Part shown: positions 7,769-47,522 of the stretch, in pieces
Numbering within the stretch: the stretch's first letter is position 1
How the letters are laid out: the number at the start of each line of letters is the position of its first letter
Assembly: GCF_000143415.4 (NCBI RefSeq)
Contig: NW_003314276.1
Span: 2,169,072-2,233,071 of the forward strand
Origin: Selaginella moellendorffii
Lineage: Eukaryota; Plantae; Lycopodiophyta
Length of the DNA stretch: 64,000 nucleotides
Direction: 5' to 3'
Translations under genes and position numbers: made by a program
The notes under the pieces: model-generated
What the model saw: the letters and a program-made list of their open reading frames with translations, nothing else
What the model was told of the DNA's origin: nothing
Databases searched by the model: none

Positions 7769-8875
7769 TTACACAAAGCATTTTAGACCGCAAGGGCCGG
7801 TCGCAAAAACCCGGTGGCAGTTCAGGCACTTAAAACCTCCAGTCAACCCCTTGTCAACGCACACCACCTCGTCCTCCTCGTCAACGCGGTCAGCAATAAT
7901 GTCAACGGGCACGTTGACCACGCCTGGATCGCCGTTGCTGGGGGGCAACTTGGGCAAGGCGTCCTCGATCTTGGTGCTGATGATCTTGCTCTTGCGCGAC
8001 ATCTTCCTCGCGCAGTGGTGGGCGGCCAGTGCTGTGCTCGATTCAAACGCGAGCTTACAACGGGAGCACTCGACAACCGCCGCTCCCCCAGTCGATTCAA
8101 GACGGCAACCATCCCCTTTACGAGATCCCTCCGCCACAGTGGCGTCGGCGCCGCCGCCAGTCGGATCAATGGCCCGGGAGGAACACTTGATCCTAATCTT
8201 CAATGGTTGCCACTGCGGCAATGGATTGTCATGGATCACAACCTTGGAAGAATTCTCCTCCCCCTCTTCCTCCATGGCCACCTTCTCGACCATCAAAGCT
8301 CCCATCTTTTTCTTCTTTTCCTCCTCCTCCCTGGCCCAGTGCCGGAGATAGACTTGCTCCAGGCTCGTGTCGCTCTCGTAGTCGGGCTCCTCGATCACCT
8401 CCTTGATTTTGATCTTCGCGGGGCTGCGCGGAGCGATAGCGGCGGCGGCCCTCGCGATCCGCGACTCCGGATGGCATCGCATGTGTCCCGACAGCCCTTT
8501 GATCGATACGAACTCCTTGCCACACTCTGGGCACTCGTGATCCTTGCCCTTGCTGCTCAGTTTCTTCTTCTTGATCTGCTCCTCCGCAAACTTGAGGTTC
8601 TTCTTAGGATTTGCCCTCAGCGCATACAACCCATTGCATCCCCCGGCCCGCTGGACGTCGTCGCCGGAGCTCCGGTCGTCATCCTCGCTGTGATCGAGGT
8701 CTTGGAACAAGCTCTCCTCGACCAGGCAGTGCCGGAGCTGGGGATAGGCCTTCTTCCGCTTGGTGCTCCTCACCAGATCCTTTTCATGACGATCCTCACC
8801 CACCTGTCCATTCTGCTGCTGCTGCTGCTCATACTCATGCTCTTGCTCCACGATCTTCCTCTTCGCCGATCTCAT
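7769..8875 (-). CDS. C2H2 zinc-finger protein (ZAT/C1 type), 3'-truncated, possibly pseudogene
   Basis: YALRANPKK motif; finger CPECGKEFVSIKGLSGHMRCH; degenerate finger CSRCKLAFESSTALAAHHC. The last finger FKCLNCHRVFATG is cut before QALGGH. ATG at 8875; intronless. Confidence 0.8.
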   Translation of the reverse strand: MRSAKRKIVEQEHEYEQQQQQNGQVGEDRHEKDLVRSTKRKKAYPQLRHCLVEESLFQDLDHSEDDDRSSGDDVQRAGGCNGLYALRANPKKNLKFAEEQIKKKKLSSKGKDHECPECGKEFVSIKGLSGHMRCHPESRIARAAAAIAPRSPAKIKIKEVIEEPDYESDTSLEQVYLRHWAREEEEKKKKMGALMVEKVAMEEEGEENSSKVVIHDNPLPQWQPLKIRIKCSSRAIDPTGGGADATVAEGSRKGDGCRLESTGGAAVVECSRCKLAFESSTALAAHHCARKMSRKSKIISTKIEDALPKLPPSNGDPGVVNVPVDIIADRVDEEDEVVCVDKGLTGGFKCLNCHRVFATGPCGLKCFV

Positions 8876-8972
8876 AGCTAGCCACCGATTGACTGATCGA
8901 CCGCGCAAGAAAAAACCGAACCCTTTCCTCTTACAACGAATTAGGGCACACTTCCTTGTTCCCGCCACAGCC

Positions 8973-8974
<2 letters not shown>

Positions 8975-9003
<29 letters not shown>
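8975..9003. repeat. (CT)n/(GA)n microsatellite upstream of the ZF ATG
   Basis: About 14 CT units. Confidence 0.9.
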
Positions 9004-9006
<3 letters not shown>

Positions 9007-9156
9007 TGGTTAAAAATTAGAGGCGAACAAAAATTCTTCTCTATGATCGACTGCATGGTTTGATCTCTCTTCCTTGCGAAATTCCAAAGCTTTGCTGCTG
9101 TTAGCTTGAAGGGGAGGAAAAAACAAGAAAAAAAAATGGTCACAAAATGGTCACCT

Positions 9157-9174
9157 TTGGACTAAAGGGAGCCC
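9157..9174 (-). promoter_or_regulatory. Putative miR319/miR159 target site in the RKD 3' UTR
   Basis: The plus strand TTGGACTAAAGGGAGCCC matches miR319 UUGGACUGAAGGGAGCUC at 16/18 positions, and both differences are G:U wobbles on the minus-strand mRNA. The site is 9 nt past the stop codon. Confidence 0.75.
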
Positions 9175-9183
9175 TGAATTTTT

Positions 9184-9865
9184 TCACTGCTGCTGCTCCG
9201 TGGATCCATCGTTGTGGGAAGAATCAGAGTTTCCACCGCCGGTGCCACCGTTTCTACAGGGAGCTACCGCTCGCTGCCGCTGCTTGTAGCTGGCTTTGAA
9301 GATTTCCTGGCGGAACTGCTTGGTTCGATCGTCCAGCTCCATCCCCGGGCTCTCCTCCATCTTCTTCTTCTGCTTCTCCAGCTCGTGAATCACGTGGATC
9401 ACTGGGTTTGGAGCGTTTCCATCCGAATCCTTGGCTAACTCCTGGCAAGTAAAGCCAGAAGTTCACGGAAGAACTTTCGACGAAGAACAAGGAAAGAACA
9501 CTAACCTGGCTCTTATGTATCAAGCTCTCAAGGCTCTTGAGCTTGCGGTGAGGCCAGCGGGGGATGCCAAACTCGCGGCACCACTTCTTGAGCACGGTGA
9601 GGCCGACTTTGAGCTCGTTGGACGCCTGAGTGATTGGCATGGTGAAGTAGCGGGAGAGATCTTCGAGGCTTATGTCCATCATCCTCTCAGTTGGGCCGAG
9701 GAAGCCACTGCACGTCACCTTGTTGCTCACATCAACCAGGTCGTTTGCTCCGTCGCAAATGGTGACTATAGCACCTGCATTGGTGTTGCCATCGCCGCCA
9801 TTGCCACCACCACCATTCCCACCACCCTTGATTCGGTTGAATCTAATTGAGCTTCTTGACATCAT
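9184..9865 (-). CDS. RKD: RWP-RK domain transcription factor, RKD subfamily (2 exons: 9865-9506, 9441-9184; 5' end uncertain)
   Basis: SLEDLSRYFTMPITQASNELKVGLTVLKKWCREFGIPRWPHRKLKSL. A GT-AG intron at 9505-9442 restores the frame to the RKD C-terminal motif ELDDRTKQFRQEIFKASYKQR. No PB1 domain. Confidence 0.88.
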
Positions 9866-23122: not shown

Positions 23123-24457
23123 ATGCACGGGATAAAAATGGATATGACTTCATGTACTCAAGCTTTGTGCAATTTCGCCCGAAAAAAATTGATCAATCAA
23201 GCCCAGATAGTCTTTCAATCAATGCCAGAGTGGGATTTGATTGCGTGGAATGGAATGCTTGCCGCATATGCCACAGCTAGGCATTTGGCTGCTACCAAAT
23301 CCCATTTCGATTCCATGCCCGAGAGGAGCCTCGTCTCCTTTAACACAATGCTCTCGGCATTCTTGGTGGCAGGGGAAATGGAAGGAGAAGAGGCGATCAA
23401 AGTGGCAGAGCTCTTCTTCGCCCAGATGCCCAACCGCGACCTCGTCTCTTGCAATGCGATGCTGGACGCGTATGCCAAGAGAGGGCATCTGTGCCGCGCA
23501 CGTATCCTCTTCGCCGCCATGCCAGAGCACGACGCCATCACGATCACCACCATGATCCACACGCTCGCTCGGGGCTCGGGAGATTTGGAATCGGCGCGGT
23601 TTTTCTTTGATTCTACCCCCGTCCGGGACGAGCTGTGTTGGAACGCGATGATCACCGCGTATGCCCAGCGCGGGCATACCGTCGAAGCGAGAAAGCTATT
23701 TGATTCCATGCCCGCCAAGATCGATTCTTCCTGGAATTCGATGCTCTCGGCTTACATCCAAGCATCAGATCTGGCGAGCGCCGAGGATTTCTTCTTACGT
23801 GCCATGGCCGAGTGGAATCTCATCGCCTGCACAGCGATGCTCGCAGCGTATGCCCAAAACGGGCATCTGTCCAAGGCCGAGGAGATCTTCGCGGCGATGG
23901 AGGAGGCGAGCTTGGTTTCCTGGACCGCTATGCTCGACGGATACGCGCGCAATGGATTCGTTCGAAACGCTGCCTCGATCTTTCACTCCATGCCGGAGAG
24001 AAACTTCGTTGCGTGGAGTGTCATGGCTTCTACGTTTGCTCGCAAAGAATGCCATCGCCACCTTTCGAGAAAGACGAGCGAATTCTTAGTTTTGGCTGAC
24101 GTCTCAGTGTGGAACTCTCTCCTGGCCTGTTGCGCTCAATCCCAGAGCGCTAGCCTTTGCTCGCAAAGAGCGTTCCAGATCTTGAGCTCGATGAGTTGCG
24201 ATGGGTTACATCCAGATGAGAGCTCTTTCGTCTCGATCTTGCTGGCTTGCAGTCGATCTGGCCACGTTGATGCTGCTCGTCGATGCTTTAGCTGCCTAAG
24301 CTCGGATTTCTTCGTGGTGCCCAGTAAGAAACTCCATAGCTGCGTCATTGACACACTATGTCGGGCAGCGTTTCGCCGAGACGCAAGCGAGCTTGTTTTC
24401 AGCATGCCTTTCAAGCCAGACTCGGTGGACCTGAGCTCGATTCATCAACTTTTGTAA
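23123..24457 (+). CDS. PLS-class PPR protein (SS-motif array + P2-L2-S2, stops at start of E domain)
   Basis: About ten 31-aa repeats (FDSMPERSLVSFNTML...), then PDESSFVSILLACSRSG, HSCVIDTLCRA and SMPFKPD. No E/DYW domain and no obvious transit peptide. Confidence 0.88.
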   Translation: MHGIKMDMTSCTQALCNFARKKLINQAQIVFQSMPEWDLIAWNGMLAAYATARHLAATKSHFDSMPERSLVSFNTMLSAFLVAGEMEGEEAIKVAELFFAQMPNRDLVSCNAMLDAYAKRGHLCRARILFAAMPEHDAITITTMIHTLARGSGDLESARFFFDSTPVRDELCWNAMITAYAQRGHTVEARKLFDSMPAKIDSSWNSMLSAYIQASDLASAEDFFLRAMAEWNLIACTAMLAAYAQNGHLSKAEEIFAAMEEASLVSWTAMLDGYARNGFVRNAASIFHSMPERNFVAWSVMASTFARKECHRHLSRKTSEFLVLADVSVWNSLLACCAQSQSASLCSQRAFQILSSMSCDGLHPDESSFVSILLACSRSGHVDAARRCFSCLSSDFFVVPSKKLHSCVIDTLCRAAFRRDASELVFSMPFKPDSVDLSSIHQLL

Positions 24458-27205: not shown

Positions 27206-30200
27206 TGTGAGTGCATGGAATATGGAAAGGGAATACAGAAATATGCATATCAATTAGCCCAAAAACCCTAGCTTATATACAGGAGTAAGTGGTCTGGATT
27301 GAAACCAATCCAATGGCTACCAAAATCCCACTACGTAAATATTAATATACAGCATCGTAGCCATACACTTAGCCCTCACATCATCCCCTCCTCTCGGAAT
27401 AATGGAAGGCCATCAGGGTTCTCTTGTAGACGGGCCAAGATTTAGAGGAACATCAGGAGGAGGCATCAGTGGATCTGTAGATGGTATTAACTGCTCTTAA
27501 TCCCTTTGTATGAAACATTTCAACCACTGCACATACACAATCTCCAGAGGATTGGCCTGTTGGATGTTATGCCGAACCTCATAAACTTGTGATTCAACTT
27601 GCCGTAACACTTGATATGGTCTTTTCCACTGTGCAAGGAGCCCCTTAGATAAACCACATACCATAAGATGGGGAAAACGGACTAACACTAAATCATTCAC
27701 TTTGTATTTCGTAGGTGGACGATGATGGGAGTTGTAGTGCCATTGTTGTCCCACTTGTACGCGGCCTAAGTGTTCGGCAAACTCAACTCGGACAAGTGGA
27801 AGAATGCTCATCAAATATTGATCCCACAACCTAGCATCGGGAGGTCGTAGCAATTGCAAAGGTAAACCCAGCTCCATTGGTAGTATTGAATCATGACTAT
27901 ATAAGAGTTTATATGGTGAAGCACCAACAGAACTCTGCACCCTTGTGACATAGGCATACCAAAGAGATGGCAAATAACCATCCCAATCCGAATGCTGAAA
28001 GTTCACATACTTCGCAATCATCCCTTTGAATGTCCGAACGAGCCATTCCACCAGACCGTCTGATTGTGGATGATACGCACTCATAAAAGTGTGGCGTATC
28101 CCCAACCGAGACGTCAAAACATGAAATGCCTCAGCCATAAATGTAGGACCATTATCCGAAAGAATCCACTCTGGACAAGAATGCTGAAACACCACTTGAT
28201 TGAGGAGGAAGTATCTAACAGTAGTTGCAGAGGCGCTAGCAAGAGCACCAACTTCCACCCAACAAGTCAAGTAGTCAGAAGCAATAATAACATACTCATT
28301 GTTAGTAGTCGACTGTGGAAAAGGTCCTATAAGATCAAATGCGACCAACTCAAATGGACAGAAAATTGCAATTGACTCCAACCGTCCTTCTGCAGCACAA
28401 GGGGGAGTATTACGAACTTGGCACCAAACGCAGCTACGCACATACCGGATAATATCACGTCGCATCTCCGGCCAATAGAAAAACCTGTGCAGCTTCTCGG
28501 TCACACGACGATATCCCATATATCTACCTAGAACAAGAGAATCATGGTAGGCATGGAGAAACTATGGAATAAAGATAGAAGGCACCACCAACCGTAAATG
28601 ATCATCAGGATCTGTCCCCACAAAATAAAGAAGGCCATTTTCAAGACGATCTTGAGAATGTAAATCAGTGGAGAAGGAAGAGGAGCTCGAGAAAGGGCAT
28701 TAGCATCAGCCATAGAACTCCTTGGGCGATGAACAACATTAAAATCATATATATGAAGCTTCAAAGCCCACTAAGTAGTACGACCAACCAAGTTCTTTCA
28801 CTTCAATAATGAAGTAACGATAGCATGGTCACCTTCAAGTAATGTCCAAGAACCATGTAGATATGCATCAAGTTTTTCGAAACCCCAAACTACTGCTAAA
28901 CACTCCTTCTCTATCGTGGAGTAGTTCACCTTTACTAGTTGTAACGTACAACTTATATATACAATGGGATGACGCTGACCAGGCACACTCAGGCTTTCTT
29001 GCATCAACACAGCTCCAAAACTAATATCAAAAGCATCTATGCACAAAATAAAAAGTTGAGTGTAGTCAGGATATGCCAAAACTGGAGGAGTCCTCAACAG
29101 CTCTTTGAGATCCACAAACGCCTGCTCACAATCTGAAGACCAGATGAAATATGACATTGATGACTTTAGCAATACTTACAACGGTGCAATGCAATTAGAA
29201 AGATGATCCACAAAACGACTGAGATACTGCACATTTCTTAGGAAGTGCTACACATCATTCACACACTTTGAAGTAGGGAACTTTAGAATGGCTACAAGTT
29301 TGTCATGATCAACTTACAAACCCTCACGAGAAATACGGTACCCAAGATAAGTTGTGTCTTTGGATCTAAACATGCACTTTGACCATTTCAGCTTTAAACC
29401 AATGTCCTGTAGCCGATCCAACACTTTACACACATCACGAATGTGCTTCTCCCACGTCCCCTCTGAGTGAATCGAGACATCATCAATGAAGTCAGCAGTC
29501 ACCTCCGGCATATCACAAAGAACCTCGTCCATCATCTGCTGGAAAGTTGCTGGAGCATTGTTCAAACTAAACGGCATCACCAAGAACTTGTACAAACCAA
29601 ACGGTGTACGAAAAGCAGTCTTAGGAATATCTTCTTCGGCCATCGGTACTTGCCAGTACCCAGAAGCAAGATCTAGCTTGGTGAACTAACGACTTCACCT
29701 TAGATGATCCAAGAGATTAGTAGTGTGAAGAAGAGGGTACATATCTGAGATCATCACTTCATTTAACGGACGATAGTCGATGTAGAAACGAATACTCCTA
29801 TCAGGCTTCGTCACAAAATGAGGTTCACATGCCCAAGGACTCCGCAATTTTCAAATAACACCCTTCTCCAACATCTTCTTGACGTTTGCATATAAAATCT
29901 TGATCTCCTTGGGTGACCGACAACGAACAGGAACCTTGATTGGACGAGCATCCCTGGTTGGAATCGGATGATATGTGGCAATCTTGGCCCCAAACGATAG
30001 GTCAAATTCAAAGAGATAAGAATACTCCTTCATGAGCTAGTCAACAGCTGCAACACAAAGATCGTCGAAGGGATCGGAAAAGGGAAGAGTAGAACAAGAT
30101 GGAAACAAAGGAGGAAATAGTGGGGGAACAAAAATAATGGAAGTAGAGGTAGAAGTAGAGGGACAAAGAGGTATGGAAGTGAGAGGAATGGATGAAACAT

Positions 30201-39195: not shown

Positions 39196-40837
39196 TCAAA
39201 ATCTTTCCAGCTTCCAGAGGGCGATGAGAATCGCGCTCGCCGCAACCAGCAAATCTCTGATCGAGTAGCAACCATTTCTTCGTGATCCACCGGAGCTCTC
39301 ACTGCTGGTGCTGGTGCTGTTGCTATCACCACCGCTAGAACCAGGCGAGCGAGGCGAGGTCGACGATGAATTTGTGGTGGCGATCTGGATCTTAAACTGG
39401 CACGTCCCGGACGAGGGGCTGGTCTTGGTGATCGTCGCCAAGCCATCGAAGTAGCAGCTCGTGTTGAGTTGATCGTAGAGCTGGTAGTAACTGTTGAAAG
39501 CATACGAAGCTTTCGCGTCACTACCCATCCCATCACACGAGCTGCCGGGGACGATCGACGTGCAATCCGAGTGAGAGCACGCATAGTCCATGTTGTTCCC
39601 CAGTCTGGCGATATCACCGCTCGGATCCAGCACGCACCACTGCCGGGGAAGATACTTGACACTGCTCGCGTTCACCAAGTTGGCCGTCGCGTTTCCACTG
39701 CCTTGAAGATCTAGCCTGTACTTGGCCTTGCCATCGTAGCCGAAGATCCCCCAGTGCCTCTCAAAGTTTCCTGGCGAGATGGTCTTTTGATCCTCGTCGA
39801 GAAGGCTGAAGAGGTAGGCCTCGAGCGGAGGCCTCCTCAGCGGCGTGCCGGACTGTAGGACGTGACGGATGAAAGCCTGGTTGAATCTGACAGCGTTGGC
39901 GACGTTGGCGTTTATGTCCCCGTCGGTCGGCCACCCGATCTCTCCGATGATGATCGTCATGTTGGAATAGCCGGCTTTCGTGAGAGCTGCCACCAGCAGA
40001 TCATAGCTCGCGTCGAAAACGTTGGTGTAGCTGAGGTTGCCATCCACTAGCGGGAAGTCAGTGCCGTCGAAGAAAGCGAAGTCCCTTGGAAAGTGTGGGT
40101 CTTGCTGGAGGCTGAGGAACGGATAGACGTTGATAACGAAGGGCGCGTTGTGCTCGGCCAGGGCTTCCACAACTTTGAGGACCTGTGGTGCTATGTCTGG
40201 ACGGAAAATCCCTCCTGAAGGTAATGTCGAGTCGCCATTGCTAAGAACGTCCCCGTTCAACGGTATAGTGGCCTTGATGCTCTCACCCAGTCCTGCACTT
40301 ACCAGAGCATCCTGGACGTTTTTCAGTGCCGGGTACGCCAAGTTGTCATAGCTTCCATTGTACGCCTTGAGAAATGGCTCGTTTCCTACGGCCACGTATC
40401 TGCAAGTAGCTATAGTAATATAAACATGATCTGTGTCTCACGACAAAACAATGACGAAACACTTACTTTATCTTGACCCCGTTCTTCGCTGTCCTGTATC
40501 GAGTGACATTTCTACGCACCCAGTTCCGAGCCGCTGCAGGAAGTGTAGCAACCAGCTCCAGCATCTCGTTGGGAATTGCTATCATCAGCTCCATATCTGT
40601 TCCCCGAAACGACTCCATCACTCCAGGATCTGCATCGAACAGCTTCACCTTGGAGATCCCATTCGCTCGAAGCATCTGGACAACGGTTTTGTTGGGAAGC
40701 CTGTGAGATGCCATTGTCCCCCAATTCACACCGATCCCTGCAGCCTCCGAGTGCCTTGAGCTGCACCACACCATGCACAACAGCAGTAGCTGCCACCACC
40801 ACTGCAGCCGGAGCGAGGAGCTCCGTCTCGAGATCAT
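39196..40837 (-). CDS. Glucan endo-1,3-beta-glucosidase (GH17 + X8 + Ser-rich linker + GPI signal); exons 40837 (or 40888)-40467, 40399-39196
   Basis: IGVNWGTMASH, YVAVGNEP, IIIGEIGWPTDG, X8 domain; same intron position as its neighbour. Confidence 0.95.
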
Positions 40838-43348: not shown

Positions 43349-44548
43349 CTTCAAACAAGACCAGGATCAGCCAGGAAGCTCTTACTTTTTCTACTTTTGA
43401 CGCTTCTCACGAGCGTAGTTCTCACAGGAGCTGATCTTTTATACTGCGAAGATCATTTGCAAACTCTTGGAAGTTTTCGACCAGCGTGAAAACACCGAAT
43501 GCTCTTTTGATTCAATCCAGGCGCGGCTGGCTGGAAACTCTTATTACAACAAACCCGATTGTCACTACTACGTTCTACGCTCCACCACCCGCGACAAAGC
43601 GGAGAAGAGAGAATCTCTCCTCCATGATCGCACAACGCGGCATGTATACGAATCGAGACCGCGGATGGTGGTGCACAGCAGCAAGAGTGTCAACAAAGGG
43701 GGCCAAAATGAACGAATATTTGCAACTTTTGATGGGTGTCGGTGACTATAGAGAAGGGAAAAAAAAACGTATTTTTTCTGCCAAGAGATGAAAAGAGATG
43801 ATAATGCCCGATGATGCTCGATCATGGTGTTGATGAGAGAAGAGTGTAGTGGAAGCAGCAGCAAATCTCTCCTTCCAATCCAACACTAAACGAGAGAGAA
43901 GATTGATCATGAGAAGAGAAAGCCAGGAAGAAGATAGATAAACAAAGTGGTGGAAAGGAGAAGAGAGAAAGAAAAGGAAAAAGTATGGTGTGAGGGAGTG
44001 ATGGATGGAAAACGAAAGGGGAGGAAGGAGTGATGATGAATGCAGTGGCAGTAGCAGCAGTGGCAGTGGCAGCAGCAGCAGTAGCAGCAGCAGATCTAAC
44101 TTTTGTTTCGGGCTCGCACCTCTGATGTAGACGCCACAGCGGTTGGTTGCCACGAAACCAAAATCGCTTTGTCTTCCCTTGCTACTGCTTGCTGGCCGAT
44201 GATGACGATCGGTGATCCAACCTGGTTATCGATCGGTGGGAAGGAAGAATCGCTCGAAAACGCTGCTCCAACCACCGAAGAGCCTTTTTGCGGGTGAGAG
44301 AACTTTGGCAGCGAAGCAGCATTGTCTCCCCCCTCCAGATCTAGAAATTGTCACCACCTGCTCTCGGCTCTCGATCCAATCGATGCTATGCCACTGCTCC
44401 CACTCAATCCATCAGGAAAAACCACTCTTTTCCTTGGCTTGGCGCTGGAATTTGGACGGGGATCTCACCCAATGGCGTATAGGACAGAACTCTCGCAAAA
44501 CTCCCGGAAGAAAGAAGAACGAAAGAATCCCTCGTGTGTGGCCTGCTA

Positions 44549-46219
44549 CTACCTAGACGATCGAGAGTCATCTCGGCTACTATCTGGCTGTTGCTGCTGC
44601 TGCTGCTGCTGCTGCGATTGCTGCTGCTGCTGCTGTTGGTGCTGCTGCATTTGCTGCTGCTGTTCTTGCGGATCGTGATGCCCGCCTCGCGTACCGTAGG
44701 GGCCGCCCTGGAACGCCGCCAGCATCCCCAGATGGCTGCTCTCCGGCGGCTGCTGGCCAAGGAGCATCGACGTGAGTTGTCCCAAGTGGTGGCCGCCGCC
44801 GCCGCCGCCGGTACCGCCCGGCTGTAAGTCGAGGCCCGGCAGTATCCGCGGCGGCATGATCGTCACGCCGCCGGGCAGCACGGACCCCGTTAGCGGCATC
44901 ATCGGGCTGCCTTGTGTCACTTGCTGTGCCGTGCGGTACAGCTGCGACGCGCCACCGCCGCCGGCCCCACCGCCGGCGGTATTAAACGTCCAGATTGCCT
45001 GCTCCGCCACGCCGCCGCCGCCGCCGCCGCCGCCAGTGGGCAGCATCCAAAACGCGCTGGGCACCATCAATCCCTGCTGCATTGTCTGGTGCTGGTGCTG
45101 CTGGGTGGATCGCGCGGCGGCGCTGGGGCTCCGGCCGAGCGTGATTCCCTGGGGATCCGGGGGATCCCTCAGGCTGCTCAGCAATCCCCGGGGACGCTTG
45201 CGGTAGTGGCCGCTGCTCTCGGGGCTGCCGCTACCGCCGCCGCCATCGCCGCCGCCACCACCGCCGCTACCGCCCTCGTCCACGTCCCCAGCGCTGCCCA
45301 GTAGCCCCTCGTGCTGGAAGCCCACGACCAGCTCCTCCCCCGGCTGCCCTAACAGCCCGGATCGCAGCCTTGTCTCCTCGCTACTCTCGGTCGCCCACCC
45401 CTGCGCCGCGGCGGCCCTAGCGGCGGCGGCAGCGGCGGCGCTTTGCTGGCGGAGCTGCTCTAGCCGGTGCTGGTGCCCCGCCGCCGCCGCGAGCTCCGCC
45501 GCCTCCCGCTGCTGCTGCCCTAGCGCCGCCAGGCCGATGGAGGTGTGGAGGCTGGCGGATCTCCCGGAGCCGGAGCTCCGGAGCGAGCCCTGGAGCGTGG
45601 CGGCGATGGCGGGGATGGTGCCCGTGCCCGTGGCGGCGATGATGGCCGGCTCCGCCTGCTGGAGGAGCCACTCGATCGTCTCGCCGTCGGACTTGTGGCC
45701 CAGCTCGCGCGTGAGCTGGAATATTCGCGCCGCGCACACCGCCGGCATCCGGATCCTCCGCCCCCGCCCCTCCACCTTGGTGTGCCGGTCCTTGGTGCTA
45801 GCGCGCTTGGATGGCGGCTTCTTGGGCGGCGCTGCCGGCGGCGCCGCCGCCTGTTCTTGAGCTTCTCCCCCGCCGCCGCCACCCCCGGCGGCCTTCCCAA
45901 CCGCTATAGCCGACGCCGCGGCTCCTGCTCCTCCTCCTCCTCCCGGCTGCTCCGCCGATGGCCCCATTGGAGATTCGTGCTGGGAGCCTCCCATTGCCGC
46001 CATTGCCTGGGCGATAGCTCCGCCTTGCGCAGCGGCGGCGGCGGCAGCAGCGGCGGCGGCTTGAGCTTGCAATCTATAGCGTTGCTGTTGATGTTGCTGC
46101 TGCTGGTAGAATTGCTGCTGCTGCTGCTGTTGCTGCTGTTGCTGCTGCTGCTGCTGCTGGGAGGACAATCCACTCTCCGAGCTTTGGGAGTCGGATTTGC
46201 CATGGCTGGCAGGATCCAT
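44549..46219 (-). CDS. Class I (PCF) TCP transcription factor, intronless; alternative in-frame ATG at 46627
   Basis: [62 protein letters not shown]; poly-Q/A/G tracts. Confidence 0.96.
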
Positions 46220-47115
46220 ACGCTGCCGAGGAGCCCCTAAATTCTTGCGACTAGCTCGACCACCACCACCACCACTCTCCTCCTGTTCCTCCTCTTCCTG
46301 TTCGTCCTCTTTCTCTACAACTACGAACGCGATCCAACTCTGTACCGCATGAACTACAGAGACGATGACGATGGTGACGCTCAGGCATCCAGGCACGAAT
46401 CGGAGCAAATCCTCCACTGTTCCTCCGCCGCCTCTGGAATTCGCCGCCCCGCCACGCCCGCGCCCCGCTCGCTCGCCTCGCCTCAGCAGATGCCAGCAGA
46501 GGGCAAATCCCCGAGCATTGCCCCGCCAATTCCTCCGCTCCCGCGCGGCCTTGACGGATCCTCCCGGCTGTAGCAATGCTGCTCCTCCTGCGCAACCTCG
46601 CCGCCTCTCACCGCCGCCACGCCTCATGCTGCCTGGTTTCCGGGCGGATTGGCGAGCTAGATCCGAGAGAGCGGCGGCGGCAGCAGCGACATTTGCAGCC
46701 CACCCAGCCGCTGCCCATCAGAGCCCCTTGGTGTAGCGCAATTCCCCTCAAGTGCCCATCACTCCAATCGATCTATCCGGCCCAGTGTTCTTGGAAGAAG
46801 CGCGAAAGAGGAAGGAATTCGCCCAACAAGGAGAGGAGAGGAGACAAGAGCGAGCGACCTGTCACTGTTAAACCCCCGCTATTGTGGTTTGGGAGAAATC
46901 CAACCATGGCAAACCTCCATCAACCTTAGATTCTCGTCAAGGACCACCTTGAATGAATGCTAAATCGATGGAAAATCCAACTCTCCCCCCTATGGCACTT
47001 GGCTGCCCGAGCGGTGGATGGATCCAGCAAAAGCTTCCTTGATGTAAGCAATCAAACCGCCTAAAGTTCCCTCCTATAGAGGCTAGAACTCCTCCGTGCT
47101 GCTGTTCTTCCCGGA

Positions 47116-47522
47116 AGAAGAGAGTGAGGAAGAGAGAGAAAGAGAGTGAGAGGAGAGAGAGTGAGAGAGAGAGAGAGAGAGCTCTTCACTGGCAGTGTGA
47201 ATATCTCAGGGTCGTGGCTTTGTTTGGCTCTCGTTCTCACAAAAGAGAGACAAAGGCGACGACGCGACGATCCGGGCCCATAGCCTCTCCTCGTCGCAGC
47301 GCTTCCATTTCCATCACTTCAATCAACAGTCGTCGTCATCGCCGATCGGGCCCAGCACCACTCTCTCTCTTTTTACCGCCTGCAATCGATCGATGGATGG
47401 ATGGATGATCGGCCACTGTGACAGCGATCCCGCGACCCGGGAGGAAGCGCTAGAATTGGCAAGAGAGAGAGAGAGAGAGCGCTAGATCAAACGTAGGAGT
47501 GAAGATCTCTCTCTCTCTCTCG
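47116..47522. repeat. GA/TC dinucleotide tracts upstream of TCP (candidate BPC/GAGA sites)
   Basis: GA-rich 47116-47181, (GA)n 47462-47479, (CT)n 47506-47521. Confidence 0.6.

What the first reader, a model, noticed from the sequence alone, without database searches (positions are those of the whole stretch)
9157..9174. miR319/159 target site right behind the RKD stop codon: candidate miR319-RKD module in a lycophyte-type genome
Seen: the minus-strand mRNA reads GGGCUCCCUUUAGUCCAA starting 9 nt after TGA. It pairs with miR319 (UUGGACUGAAGGGAGCUC) over nt 1-18 with only two G:U pairs (nt 8 and 17) and perfect pairing at nt 9-11. No miRNA* arm is visible, so this is a target rather than a MIR gene. 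Known: angiosperm miR319/159 targets are class II TCP and GAMYB, whereas RKD is a reported miR319 target in the liverwort Marchantia. Inference: regulation of the germ-cell regulator RKD by miR319 may be ancestral and retained in vascular plants. The site is also only about 280 bp upstream of the ZF ATG, so it could lie in a ZF 5' leader or a read-through RNA.
Basis: partly seen in the sequence, partly recalled or inferred. Interest (0 to 1): 0.82.

Follow-up and report, generated by a model that had tools for sequence, protein, structure and literature searches.

The report
Spikemoss RKD miR159/319 target site
Just behind the stop codon of a germ-cell regulator gene (RKD) of the spikemoss Selaginella moellendorffii lies a real, anciently conserved binding site for the miR159/319 microRNA family; it extends to lycophytes a regulatory pair already proven in liverworts and predicted in mosses and ferns, so it is a solid gap-filler, not a new kind of thing.

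Summary
GGGCTCCCTTTAGTCCAA lies at 9174..9157 (minus strand), 9 nt after the TGA of a two-exon, 205-aa RWP-RK (RKD) gene. It pairs with miR319 nt 1-18 with two G:U. It also pairs with the 20-nt miR159 reported from this species, with no mismatch and three G:U.

- **Not chance:** it is the only such site in the window (score 1.5; next best 4.5).
- **Not a MIR gene:** there is no hairpin.
- **Source:** Selaginella moellendorffii, scaffold GL377580.1, by a 100% match over 4,079 nt.
- **Conservation:** the same site lies 2-3 nt behind the RKD stop in Sphagnum balticum, Sphagnum-like and moss-like contigs and in the fern Lygodium, and about 40 nt behind it in a fern-like transcript. It is the only invariant block in these 3' UTRs.
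- **Transcription:** spliced RNA contigs from four runs carry the site in RKD mRNA.

Caveats:

- Those contigs come from a 96.5%-identical twin copy, not the window copy.
- The window copy has radical substitutions in its DNA-binding domain (K83N, R95W) and was not seen in RNA.
- Cleavage is untested.
- The ancestral miR159/319-RKD idea, ferns included, was published in 2017 (PMC5426797).

Verdict: new member of a known kind, of moderate interest.

The parts
9157..9174 (-). Core target site, complementary to miR319 nt 1-18 with G:U at nt 8 and 17. The predicted slice lies between 9167 and 9166.
9156..9175 (-). The same site in the miR159 / CUUGG-isoform register. It pairs over 20 nt with UUUGGAUUGAAGGGAGCUCU, with no mismatch and 3 G:U. 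The predicted slice lies between 9166 and 9165.
   Evidence: miRNA sequence from the supplement of PMC5569507
9184..9186 (-). RKD stop codon (TGA), 9 nt upstream of the core site.
9184..9441 (-). RKD exon 2 (85 codons plus the stop). It encodes the conserved C-terminal region.
   Evidence: splice joint; tblastn to homologs
9442..9505 (-). 64-nt GT..AG intron, removed in the RNA contigs.
   Evidence: table 5: joint 9440/9505, CT..AC on the + strand
9506..9865 (-). RKD exon 1 (120 codons) with the RWP-RK domain. The window copy carries N83 and W95 where all homologs have K or R.
9014..9183 (-). Minimum 3' UTR. This stretch is covered by the same spliced RNA contigs as the RKD exons (twin copy, 1 substitution and a 1-nt indel). 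The contigs break at the GA repeat, so the true 3' end is unknown.
   Evidence: table 8
9133..9154 (-). GTGACCATTTT repeated twice, directly after the site. A GGTGACC motif also follows the site in Sphagnum.
8964..9013 (.). (GA)n microsatellite between RKD and the zinc-finger gene. The RNA contigs end here.
7769..8875 (-). Downstream C2H2 zinc-finger ORF on the same strand, ATG 282 nt after the site. No contig joins it to RKD.

Best explanation
The stretch is a genuine, inherited target site for the miR159/319 microRNA family. It lies at the very start of the 3' UTR of an RKD (RWP-RK) transcription-factor gene of Selaginella moellendorffii.

**Proposed mechanism.** A 20-21-nt miR159/319-family RNA loaded in an AGO1-type Argonaute pairs with 9175/9174-9156/9157 of the mRNA. 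It slices opposite its nt 10/11, which means between 9167 and 9166 in the miR319 register or between 9166 and 9165 in the miR159/CUUGG register. This removes RKD mRNA from cells that express the miRNA and so confines this germ-cell and reproductive regulator. Marchantia works this way: there a miR319-resistant RKD phenocopies mir319 mutants.

**Shown here:**
- the complementarity and its uniqueness in the window;
- the absence of a hairpin;
- the same site at the same place in moss and fern RKD genes;
- its presence in spliced RKD mRNA of a 96.5%-identical twin copy.

**Taken from the literature:** miR159/319-family small RNAs exist in S. moellendorffii, and the module is validated in liverworts.

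**Inferred:** slicing in Selaginella and its biological role.

The copy in this window is probably the weaker partner of the pair. It has derived radical substitutions in the RWP-RK domain, has lost one G of the site's G-run, and was not detected in RNA.
For: - **Pairing:** miR319 nt 1-18 pairs with 2 G:U. The 20-nt miR159 (Smo-miR159-3p.2357 of PMC5569507) pairs with 0 mismatches and 3 G:U, score 1.5 against a next best of 4.5 in the window.
- **Uniqueness:** it is the only match in the window.
- **Species:** S. moellendorffii.
- **Orthologous sites behind the RKD stop:**
  - Sphagnum balticum OZ233189.1, TGA-GT-TGAGCTCCCTTCTGTCCAAA;
  - Sphagnum-like and moss-like contigs L003, L004 and L002;
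  - fern-like transcript L006, about 40 nt after the stop;
  - Lygodium japonicum, TAG-CGT-AGGGGCTCCCTTCCGTCCAAAGG.
- **Conserved block:** alignment A2 has one invariant block, GCTCCCTT..GTCCAAA, in otherwise unalignable UTRs.
- **Negative controls:** Amborella RKD1 and the S. moellendorffii RKD2-like locus have no site.
- **Transcription:** RNA contigs of 4 runs from 4 studies join 9811-9505 to 9440-9014 with the GT..AG intron removed. The site is unchanged in them apart from an extra G that extends miR319 pairing to nt 19.
- **Accessibility:** the site is essentially unstructured in the predicted mRNA fold.
Against: - No cleavage data exist for Selaginella RKD. The only S. moellendorffii PARE study reported nine peaks, and none was RKD.
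- The RNA contigs are 96.5% identical to the window, so they are not from this copy. No contig of the window copy itself was seen.
- The window copy differs from the twin by 10 non-synonymous and 6 synonymous changes. At least seven of the non-synonymous changes are derived here at conserved positions, including K83N and R95W in the DNA-binding domain. It may therefore be a decaying allele or duplicate.
- Its site has 3 mismatches to nt 19-21 of a 21-nt miR319.
- The exact mature miR159/319 isoforms of this species are uncertain. The miRBase smo-miR319 is a 5p product, and some 3p reads in PMC5569507 do not map to the genome.
Confidence: 0.72

Rival explanations
1. Relic site in a dying copy. 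The site is real by descent, but the RKD copy in this window is a silent, degenerating allele or duplicate. On this view nothing is regulated at this locus, and the working module sits in the 96.5% twin.
For: - Window against twin: 10 non-synonymous and 6 synonymous differences, with the window derived at K83N, R95W, R56L, A137V, V138I, R162Q and A166E.
- Run-specific differences among twin-type transcripts are 5 synonymous to 1 non-synonymous.
- Only twin-type contigs appear in the four RNA runs.
- DNA runs hold only about 0.3 of the window's 31-mers, which is what a 96.5% copy gives.
- The site's G-run is one G shorter than in the twin and in Lygodium.
Against: - The ORF, the splice sites and the in-frame 9-nt indel are all intact.
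- Contigs drop minor variants, so absence from contigs is not absence from RNA.
- The 3' UTR is nearly identical to the twin's.
- This rival concerns only this copy. It does not touch the existence of the module in the species.
Confidence: 0.3
2. Chance complementarity with no function.
For: With 3 mismatches allowed, 15 of 100 shuffles of the window give at least one match.
Against: - The real match has no mismatch. For 18 paired positions with up to two G:U, the chance is about 1e-4 per window and about 1e-7 for a 200-nt UTR (my own arithmetic).
- The next best site in the window scores 4.5 against 1.5.
- The same sequence sits at the same place in moss and fern RKD genes.
Confidence: 0.02
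3. The site acts in the 5' leader of the downstream zinc-finger gene, or in a read-through RNA, rather than in RKD mRNA.
For: The zinc-finger gene is on the same strand and its ATG is only 282 nt downstream. The RNA contigs break at the GA repeat, so the RKD 3' end is unmapped.
Against: - The contigs that hold the site also hold both spliced RKD exons.
- No contig joins the site to the zinc-finger ORF.
- In other lineages the site travels with RKD's stop codon.
Confidence: 0.04
4. The + strand, which reads UUGGACUAAAGGGAGCCC, is a degenerate MIR319 gene.
For: The + strand reads a miR319-like 18-mer with two transitions.
Against: - There is no complementary arm within 300 nt.
- The folds are no better than shuffles.
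- Rfam gives no hit.
- The stretch lies inside a spliced mRNA of the opposite strand.
Confidence: 0.01
5. The block is conserved for a reason unrelated to miRNA, for example as a protein-binding or translation-termination element.
For: It lies next to the stop codon in several lineages, and a GGTGACC motif follows it in both Sphagnum and Selaginella.
Against: - The invariant positions coincide with the miR159/319 pairing.
- The two variable positions lie where miR159 and miR319 differ from each other, or next to that position.
- In Marchantia, mutating or deleting the site gives the mir319 mutant phenotype.
Confidence: 0.03

Closest known systems
Marchantia polymorpha MpmiR319-MpRKD module (Lin et al. 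2016, PMC4788410; Futagami et al., bioRxiv 10.1101/2023.09.29.560093; review PMC10721683)
   Same: [quoted passage not shown]
   Different: In Marchantia the module has degradome evidence and genetic proof from a miR319-resistant transgene. Here there is sequence and conservation evidence only. The host is a lycophyte with at least two RKD types, and one of them (RKD2-like) lacks the site.
Predicted miR159/319 sites in RKD 3' UTRs of the fern Lygodium japonicum and the moss Physcomitrium patens (Berruezo et al. 2017, PMC5426797)
   Same: The position behind the stop is the same (Lygodium: 3 nt after TAG). Selaginella and Lygodium also share the GGGCUCCC variant, which gives G:U at miR319 nt 17, and the trailing AAAGG. 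That paper already proposes that the interaction is ancestral in land plants and lost in seed plants.
   Different: That paper did not examine lycophytes. The Selaginella site has UUUAG where Lygodium has UUCCG, so it pairs with canonical miR319 through a G:U instead of a mismatch.
Angiosperm miR319-TCP and miR159-GAMYB modules
   Same: The same miRNA family and the same slicing mechanism at near-perfect sites.
   Different: Those sites lie inside coding sequence of unrelated transcription-factor families. The TCP gene in this window (44552-46627) has no miR159/319 site.
TAS3 5' miR390 site next to the stop codon of a short ORF (Iwakawa et al., bioRxiv 10.1101/2020.09.10.288902)
   Same: A miRNA site is kept within a few nucleotides of a stop codon over long evolutionary time.
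   Different: TAS3 uses a different miRNA and Argonaute (miR390-AGO7 with SGS3), and the effect shown there is ribosome stalling that boosts secondary siRNAs. Nothing of that kind has been tested for RKD.

Membership tests
Canonical plant miRNA target site (miR159/319 family) | Near-perfect complementarity: no mismatch at miRNA nt 2-12, pairing at nt 10-11, low penalty score. | tested here: met
   Against the 20-nt miR159: 0 mismatches and 3 G:U (unweighted 1.5, Allen-type 2.5). Against a 20-nt miR319: 2 G:U and 2 mismatches at the 3' end (3.0 / 3.5)..
Canonical plant miRNA target site (miR159/319 family) | The site lies in sense orientation in a mature transcript. | tested here: inconclusive
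   Met for the 96.5% twin: spliced contigs from 4 runs cover 9811-9014. The window copy itself was not seen in RNA contigs.
Canonical plant miRNA target site (miR159/319 family) | The site is conserved in orthologs while the flanks diverge. | tested here: met
   Sphagnum balticum, Sphagnum-like, moss-like, fern-like and Lygodium sequences all have it. The invariant block is GCTCCCTT..GTCCAAA.
Canonical plant miRNA target site (miR159/319 family) | The cognate miRNA is expressed in the same species. | not testable with these tools
   [quoted passage not shown] Reads UUUGGAUUGAAGGGAGCUCU and CUUGGAUUGAAGGGAGCU are reported from S. moellendorffii (PMC5569507 supplement). Counts are low and some isoforms do not map to the genome.
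Canonical plant miRNA target site (miR159/319 family) | Slicing opposite nt 10/11, shown by degradome or 5' RACE. | not testable with these tools
   The published S. moellendorffii PARE reported nine peaks, none of them RKD.
RKD subfamily of RWP-RK transcription factors | RWP-RK domain present. | tested here: met
   Pfam PF02042, E = 2.7e-24, residues 64-112.
RKD subfamily of RWP-RK transcription factors | Short protein without the GAF-like and PB1 domains of NLPs. The best homologs are named RKD. | tested here: met
   205 aa with no other Pfam domain. The hits are RKD2-like, RKD5 and RKD1 proteins. The tree is unresolved.
RKD subfamily of RWP-RK transcription factors | Conserved basic residues of the domain (ASK/R..LKVG and LKK[RK]CREFG). 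| tested here: not met
   The window copy has N83 and W95, whereas the twin and all 60 homologs inspected have K or R. This bears on whether this copy is functional, not on its descent.
MIR159/319 gene | Long fold-back precursor with a miRNA/miRNA* duplex. | tested here: not met
   No inverted repeat, fold z-scores of +1.13 and -0.30, and no Rfam hit.

The most novel reading that the evidence does not exclude
The miR159/319 site has stayed within about 2-9 nt of the RKD stop codon since mosses, lycophytes and ferns diverged, and it is 'just downstream' of the stop in Marchantia. This placement may itself be functional. A terminating ribosome and the miRNA-Argonaute complex would compete or cooperate on the same nucleotides. 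Repression of RKD would then be coupled to its translation, by analogy with ribosome stalling at the stop-adjacent miR390 site of TAS3.
Probability: 0.15. Interest if true: 0.7.

Novelty: new member of a known kind. Interest (0 to 1): 0.36.

Why it matters
RKD controls germ-cell and egg identity across land plants, and miR319-RKD is one of the few miRNA-target pairs proven in a liverwort but absent from seed plants. A site at the same place in a lycophyte means the pair is now seen or predicted in liverworts, mosses, lycophytes and ferns. This strengthens the view that it was present in the common ancestor of land plants and lost on the way to seed plants. It also points to a specific S. moellendorffii RKD gene pair, apparently missing from protein sets, as the one to study. 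It gives an exact nucleotide at which to look for cleavage in existing degradome data. The contrast inside one genome, between RKD copies with and without the site and between a conserved and a degenerating copy, is a small natural experiment on how such modules are lost.

Tried and rejected
- **MIR gene on the + strand:** rejected. There is no hairpin and no Rfam hit.
- **Second RKD copy or second site in the window:** none found.
- **Species from a 936-aa PPR protein:** uninformative, with best hits at only about 31% identity and no exact record. The TCP ORF gave the exact match.
- **Fetching the twin copy:** a word search with exon 2 found nothing. The first search found no protein more than 82% identical, so neither copy seems to be in the protein collection.
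- **Diphasiastrum RKD loci (P0027, P0028):** not on record, so Lycopodiaceae could not be checked.
- **Zinc-finger ORF look-up, to see neighbouring gene calls:** not on record.
- **RKD tree to place the window copy and date the loss in RKD2-like:** unresolved because the domain is short. All 17 rows I chose were used.
- **Contigs L005 and L007:** too short to reach the stop codon, so their lack of a site says nothing.
- **Earlier findings by sequence:** blank.

Full report
**1. The observation**

On the minus strand the window reads ...CAGCAGTGA-AAAAATTCA-GGGCTCCCTTTAGTCCAA-AGGTGACC.... The TGA is at 9186-9184 and the 18-mer at 9174-9157, nine nucleotides after the stop.

The 18-mer pairs with miR319 nt 1-18.

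It is the only match in the window on either strand.

I also scored every position of both strands against the 20-nt miR159 reported from this species, UUUGGAUUGAAGGGAGCUCU (Smo-miR159-3p.2357, supplement of PMC5569507).
- The site scores 1.5: no mismatch and three G:U, in a register shifted by one base (9175-9156).
- The next best of about 128,000 positions scores 4.5.

The site therefore fits miR159 at least as well as miR319. Sequence alone cannot tell which member of the family would act.

**2. Not a MIR gene**

The + strand reads a miR319-like 18-mer, but nothing supports a precursor.
- There is no complementary arm within 300 nt.
- Folds of the + strand on either side are no better than shuffles (z +1.13 and -0.30).
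- Rfam finds no family in the whole window.
- In the predicted fold of the mRNA strand the site is essentially open.

**3. The gene**

The site follows a two-exon gene on the minus strand:
- exon 1: 9865-9506;
- a 64-nt GT..AG intron: 9505-9442;
- exon 2: 9441-9184.

It encodes 205 aa. Exon 1 carries an RWP-RK domain (PF02042, E = 2.7e-24) and no other domain. The best homologs are RKD proteins of Sphagnum, Selaginella, Diphasiastrum and seed plants. It shares the HRKLKSL..LIH signature with the two lycophyte RKDs and an alga, whereas mosses and ferns have HRKMKSL.

**4. The organism**

Earlier notes of this scan called the genome Selaginella, so I tested that.
- The 692-aa TCP ORF of the window is encoded exactly in NCBI GCA_000143415.2, S. 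moellendorffii scaffold GL377580.1.
- The fetched 4,079 nt are 100% identical to window 43549-47627.
- Record coordinate equals window coordinate plus 2,169,071, so the site is at GL377580.1:2178228-2178245.

**5. Is the site inherited?**

The literature already answers this for other lineages.
- In Marchantia, RKD mRNA is cut by miR319 (degradome, PMC4788410).
- A miR319-resistant MpRKD phenocopies mir319 mutants.
- Berruezo et al. 2017 (PMC5426797) predicted the same site in the RKD 3' UTR of the fern Lygodium japonicum and of Physcomitrium. They found none in seed plants and proposed an ancient interaction lost in seed plants.
- Their Lygodium transcript reads TAG-CGT-AGGGGCTCCCTTCCGTCCAAAGG. 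It shares with Selaginella the GGGCUCCC variant and the trailing AAAGG.

I extended this with genomic and transcript contigs of RKD homologs.

| Source | Locus | Sequence or position behind the RKD stop |
|---|---|---|
| Sphagnum balticum OZ233189.1 | L009 | TGA-GT-TGAGCTCCCTTCTGTCCAAA |
| Two Sphagnum-like contigs | L003, L004 | The same sequence |
| Moss-like contig | L002 | TGA-GT-TGAGCTCCCTTCCGTCCAAA |
| Fern-like transcript | L006 | GAGCAGCTCCCTTCGGTCCAA, about 40 nt after its stop |

In an alignment of these UTR starts the only invariant block is GCTCCCTT..GTCCAAA (A2). The two variable positions lie opposite miR319 nt 7-8; miR159 and miR319 differ from each other one position further along, at nt 6 in that register.

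The controls have no site within 2 kb: Amborella RKD1 (L010) and the other annotated S. moellendorffii RKD (RKD2-like, L001). I found no paper that reports the site in a lycophyte.

**6. Is it transcribed, and in which RNA?**

Contigs of 890-963 nt from four runs in four studies (coded organisms A and C) cover 9811-9505 and 9440-9014. The 64-nt intron is skipped, reading CT..AC on the + strand, which is GT..AG on the minus strand.

So the site lies in spliced RKD-sense RNA, with at least 170 nt of 3' UTR after the stop. No contig links it to the zinc-finger ORF, whose ATG (8875) lies 282 nt downstream on the same strand. The contigs break at the (GA)n repeat at 8964-9013, so the 3' end is unknown.

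Two cautions apply. The runs are only guessed to be RNA, although the removed intron and the transcriptome-sized contig sets fit RNA. Contigs also cannot show transcript ends or levels.

**7. An unexpected point: the contigs are not from this copy**

The contigs differ from the window at about 25 positions (about 96.5% identity). They also have an in-frame 9-nt insertion after 9190 and one extra base in the site's G-run, giving GGGGCUCCC as in Lygodium. That extra G extends miR319 pairing to nt 19. The DNA runs hold only 0.25-0.30 of the window's 31-mers, which is what a 96.5% copy would give.

Sixteen coding differences are shared by all four runs. Ten are non-synonymous and six synonymous.
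- At seven or more of the non-synonymous ones, the twin has the residue found in other RKDs and the window has a derived one.
- These include K83N (ASKEL to ASNEL) and R95W (LKKRCREFG to LKKWCREFG) in the DNA-binding domain.
- The others are R56L, A137V, V138I, R162Q and A166E.

Differences private to single runs are five synonymous to one non-synonymous. The 3' UTR differs by only one substitution and the 1-nt indel.

The twin therefore looks like the constrained, expressed gene. The window copy looks like a relaxed allele, haplotype or duplicate. I could not fetch the twin, so whether it is an allele or a paralog stays open. Neither copy appears in the protein collection, so the gene may be unannotated.

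**8. Mechanism and confidence**

The best-supported reading is a canonical plant miRNA target site. An AGO1-type complex carrying a miR159/319-family RNA pairs with the start of the RKD 3' UTR. It slices between 9167 and 9166 (miR319 register) or between 9166 and 9165 (miR159/CUUGG register) and so restricts RKD expression.

- **Shown here:** pairing, uniqueness, positional conservation across mosses, a lycophyte and ferns, and presence in spliced RKD RNA of the twin.
- **From papers:** family members exist in S. moellendorffii, and the module works in Marchantia.
- **Inferred:** slicing and a biological role in Selaginella.

The one PARE study in this species found nine peaks and none was RKD. 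That is weak evidence, because RKD is likely to be rare in the tissues sampled.

My confidence that this is a genuine inherited miR159/319 site that works in the species is 0.72. My confidence that the window copy itself is silent or decaying is about 0.3. The two readings are compatible.

**9. Novelty**

The kind is known, and the evolutionary inference, including retention in vascular plants (ferns), was published in 2017. Four things are new here:
- the lycophyte instance;
- its exact genomic place;
- the evidence from named Sphagnum and other contigs;
- the within-genome contrast between RKD copies, with and without the site, constrained and relaxed.

This is a new member of a known kind.

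The most novel reading still open concerns the placement of the site. It lies 2-9 nt from the stop codon in Sphagnum, Lygodium and Selaginella, and next to the stop in Marchantia. That adjacency may itself be functional and link translation termination to RISC action, as ribosome stalling does at the stop-adjacent miR390 site of TAS3. The fern-like transcript, with about 40 nt of spacing, argues against a strict requirement. I put this reading at 0.15.

Noticed in passing
window 44552-46627 (-): An intact 692-aa TCP transcription-factor ORF (PF03634, E = 1.8e-31), identical to a gene of GL377580.1. TCPs are the classic angiosperm miR319 targets, but this one has no miR159/319-complementary site (no hit at score 5 or below).
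   Followed up: partly
window 9133-9155 (-); L009:9498-9507; L003:5519-5528: Directly after the miRNA site, Selaginella has AGGTGACC followed by a tandem GTGACCATTTT GTGACCATTTT. Sphagnum has TAGGGTGACC at the same place and the moss-like L002 has TAGAGTGAC. This may be a second small conserved element, or chance.
   Followed up: no
window 9184-9865 (-) and its unseen twin: Neither this RKD gene nor its 96.5% expressed twin was found in the 5.8-billion-protein collection. The best hit was 82% identical over the domain, and a search with exon 2 found nothing. The gene is probably missing from S. moellendorffii annotations.
   Followed up: partly
L001 (S. moellendorffii GL377565.1:1626864-1631888): The annotated S. 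moellendorffii 'RKD2-like' gene (252 aa) has no miR159/319 site in its 3' UTR or within 2 kb downstream. Only one RKD lineage of this species has kept the site.
   Followed up: partly
window 8964-9013: A (GA)n microsatellite of about 25 units lies between the RKD 3' UTR and the zinc-finger gene. All RNA contigs break there.
   Followed up: no
window 7769-8875 (-): A C2H2 zinc-finger ORF (368 aa from the first ATG; zf-C2H2_6, E = 2.8e-10) lies on the same strand, 282 nt after the site. Short low-depth contigs of one run cover 8424-8707 with a few differences, so a twin of this gene may also be expressed. Its exact product is not on record.
   Followed up: partly
window 49807-52617 (+), 23123-24457 (+), 39199-40395 (-), 27500-28519 (-): Other content of the window: a 936-aa P-type PPR gene (17 repeats; best named relative only 31% identical), a second PPR ORF, a GH17 glucanase with an X8 domain, and a retrotransposon integrase fragment. 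Genes are GC-rich (50-66%) and sit in AT-rich spacers (27-38%).
   Followed up: no
Literature: PMC5569507, supplementary files 1 and 4: Several low-count 'Smo' miR159/319-3p reads (for example CUUGGAAAGAAGGGAGCUCCU with 47 reads and AUUGGUCUGAAGGGAGCUUC with 134 reads) are identical to sequences that are thousands of times more abundant in fern libraries of the same study. The authors say the first of these does not map to the genome. Carry-over between samples is an alternative to their explanation of an incomplete genome.
   Followed up: no
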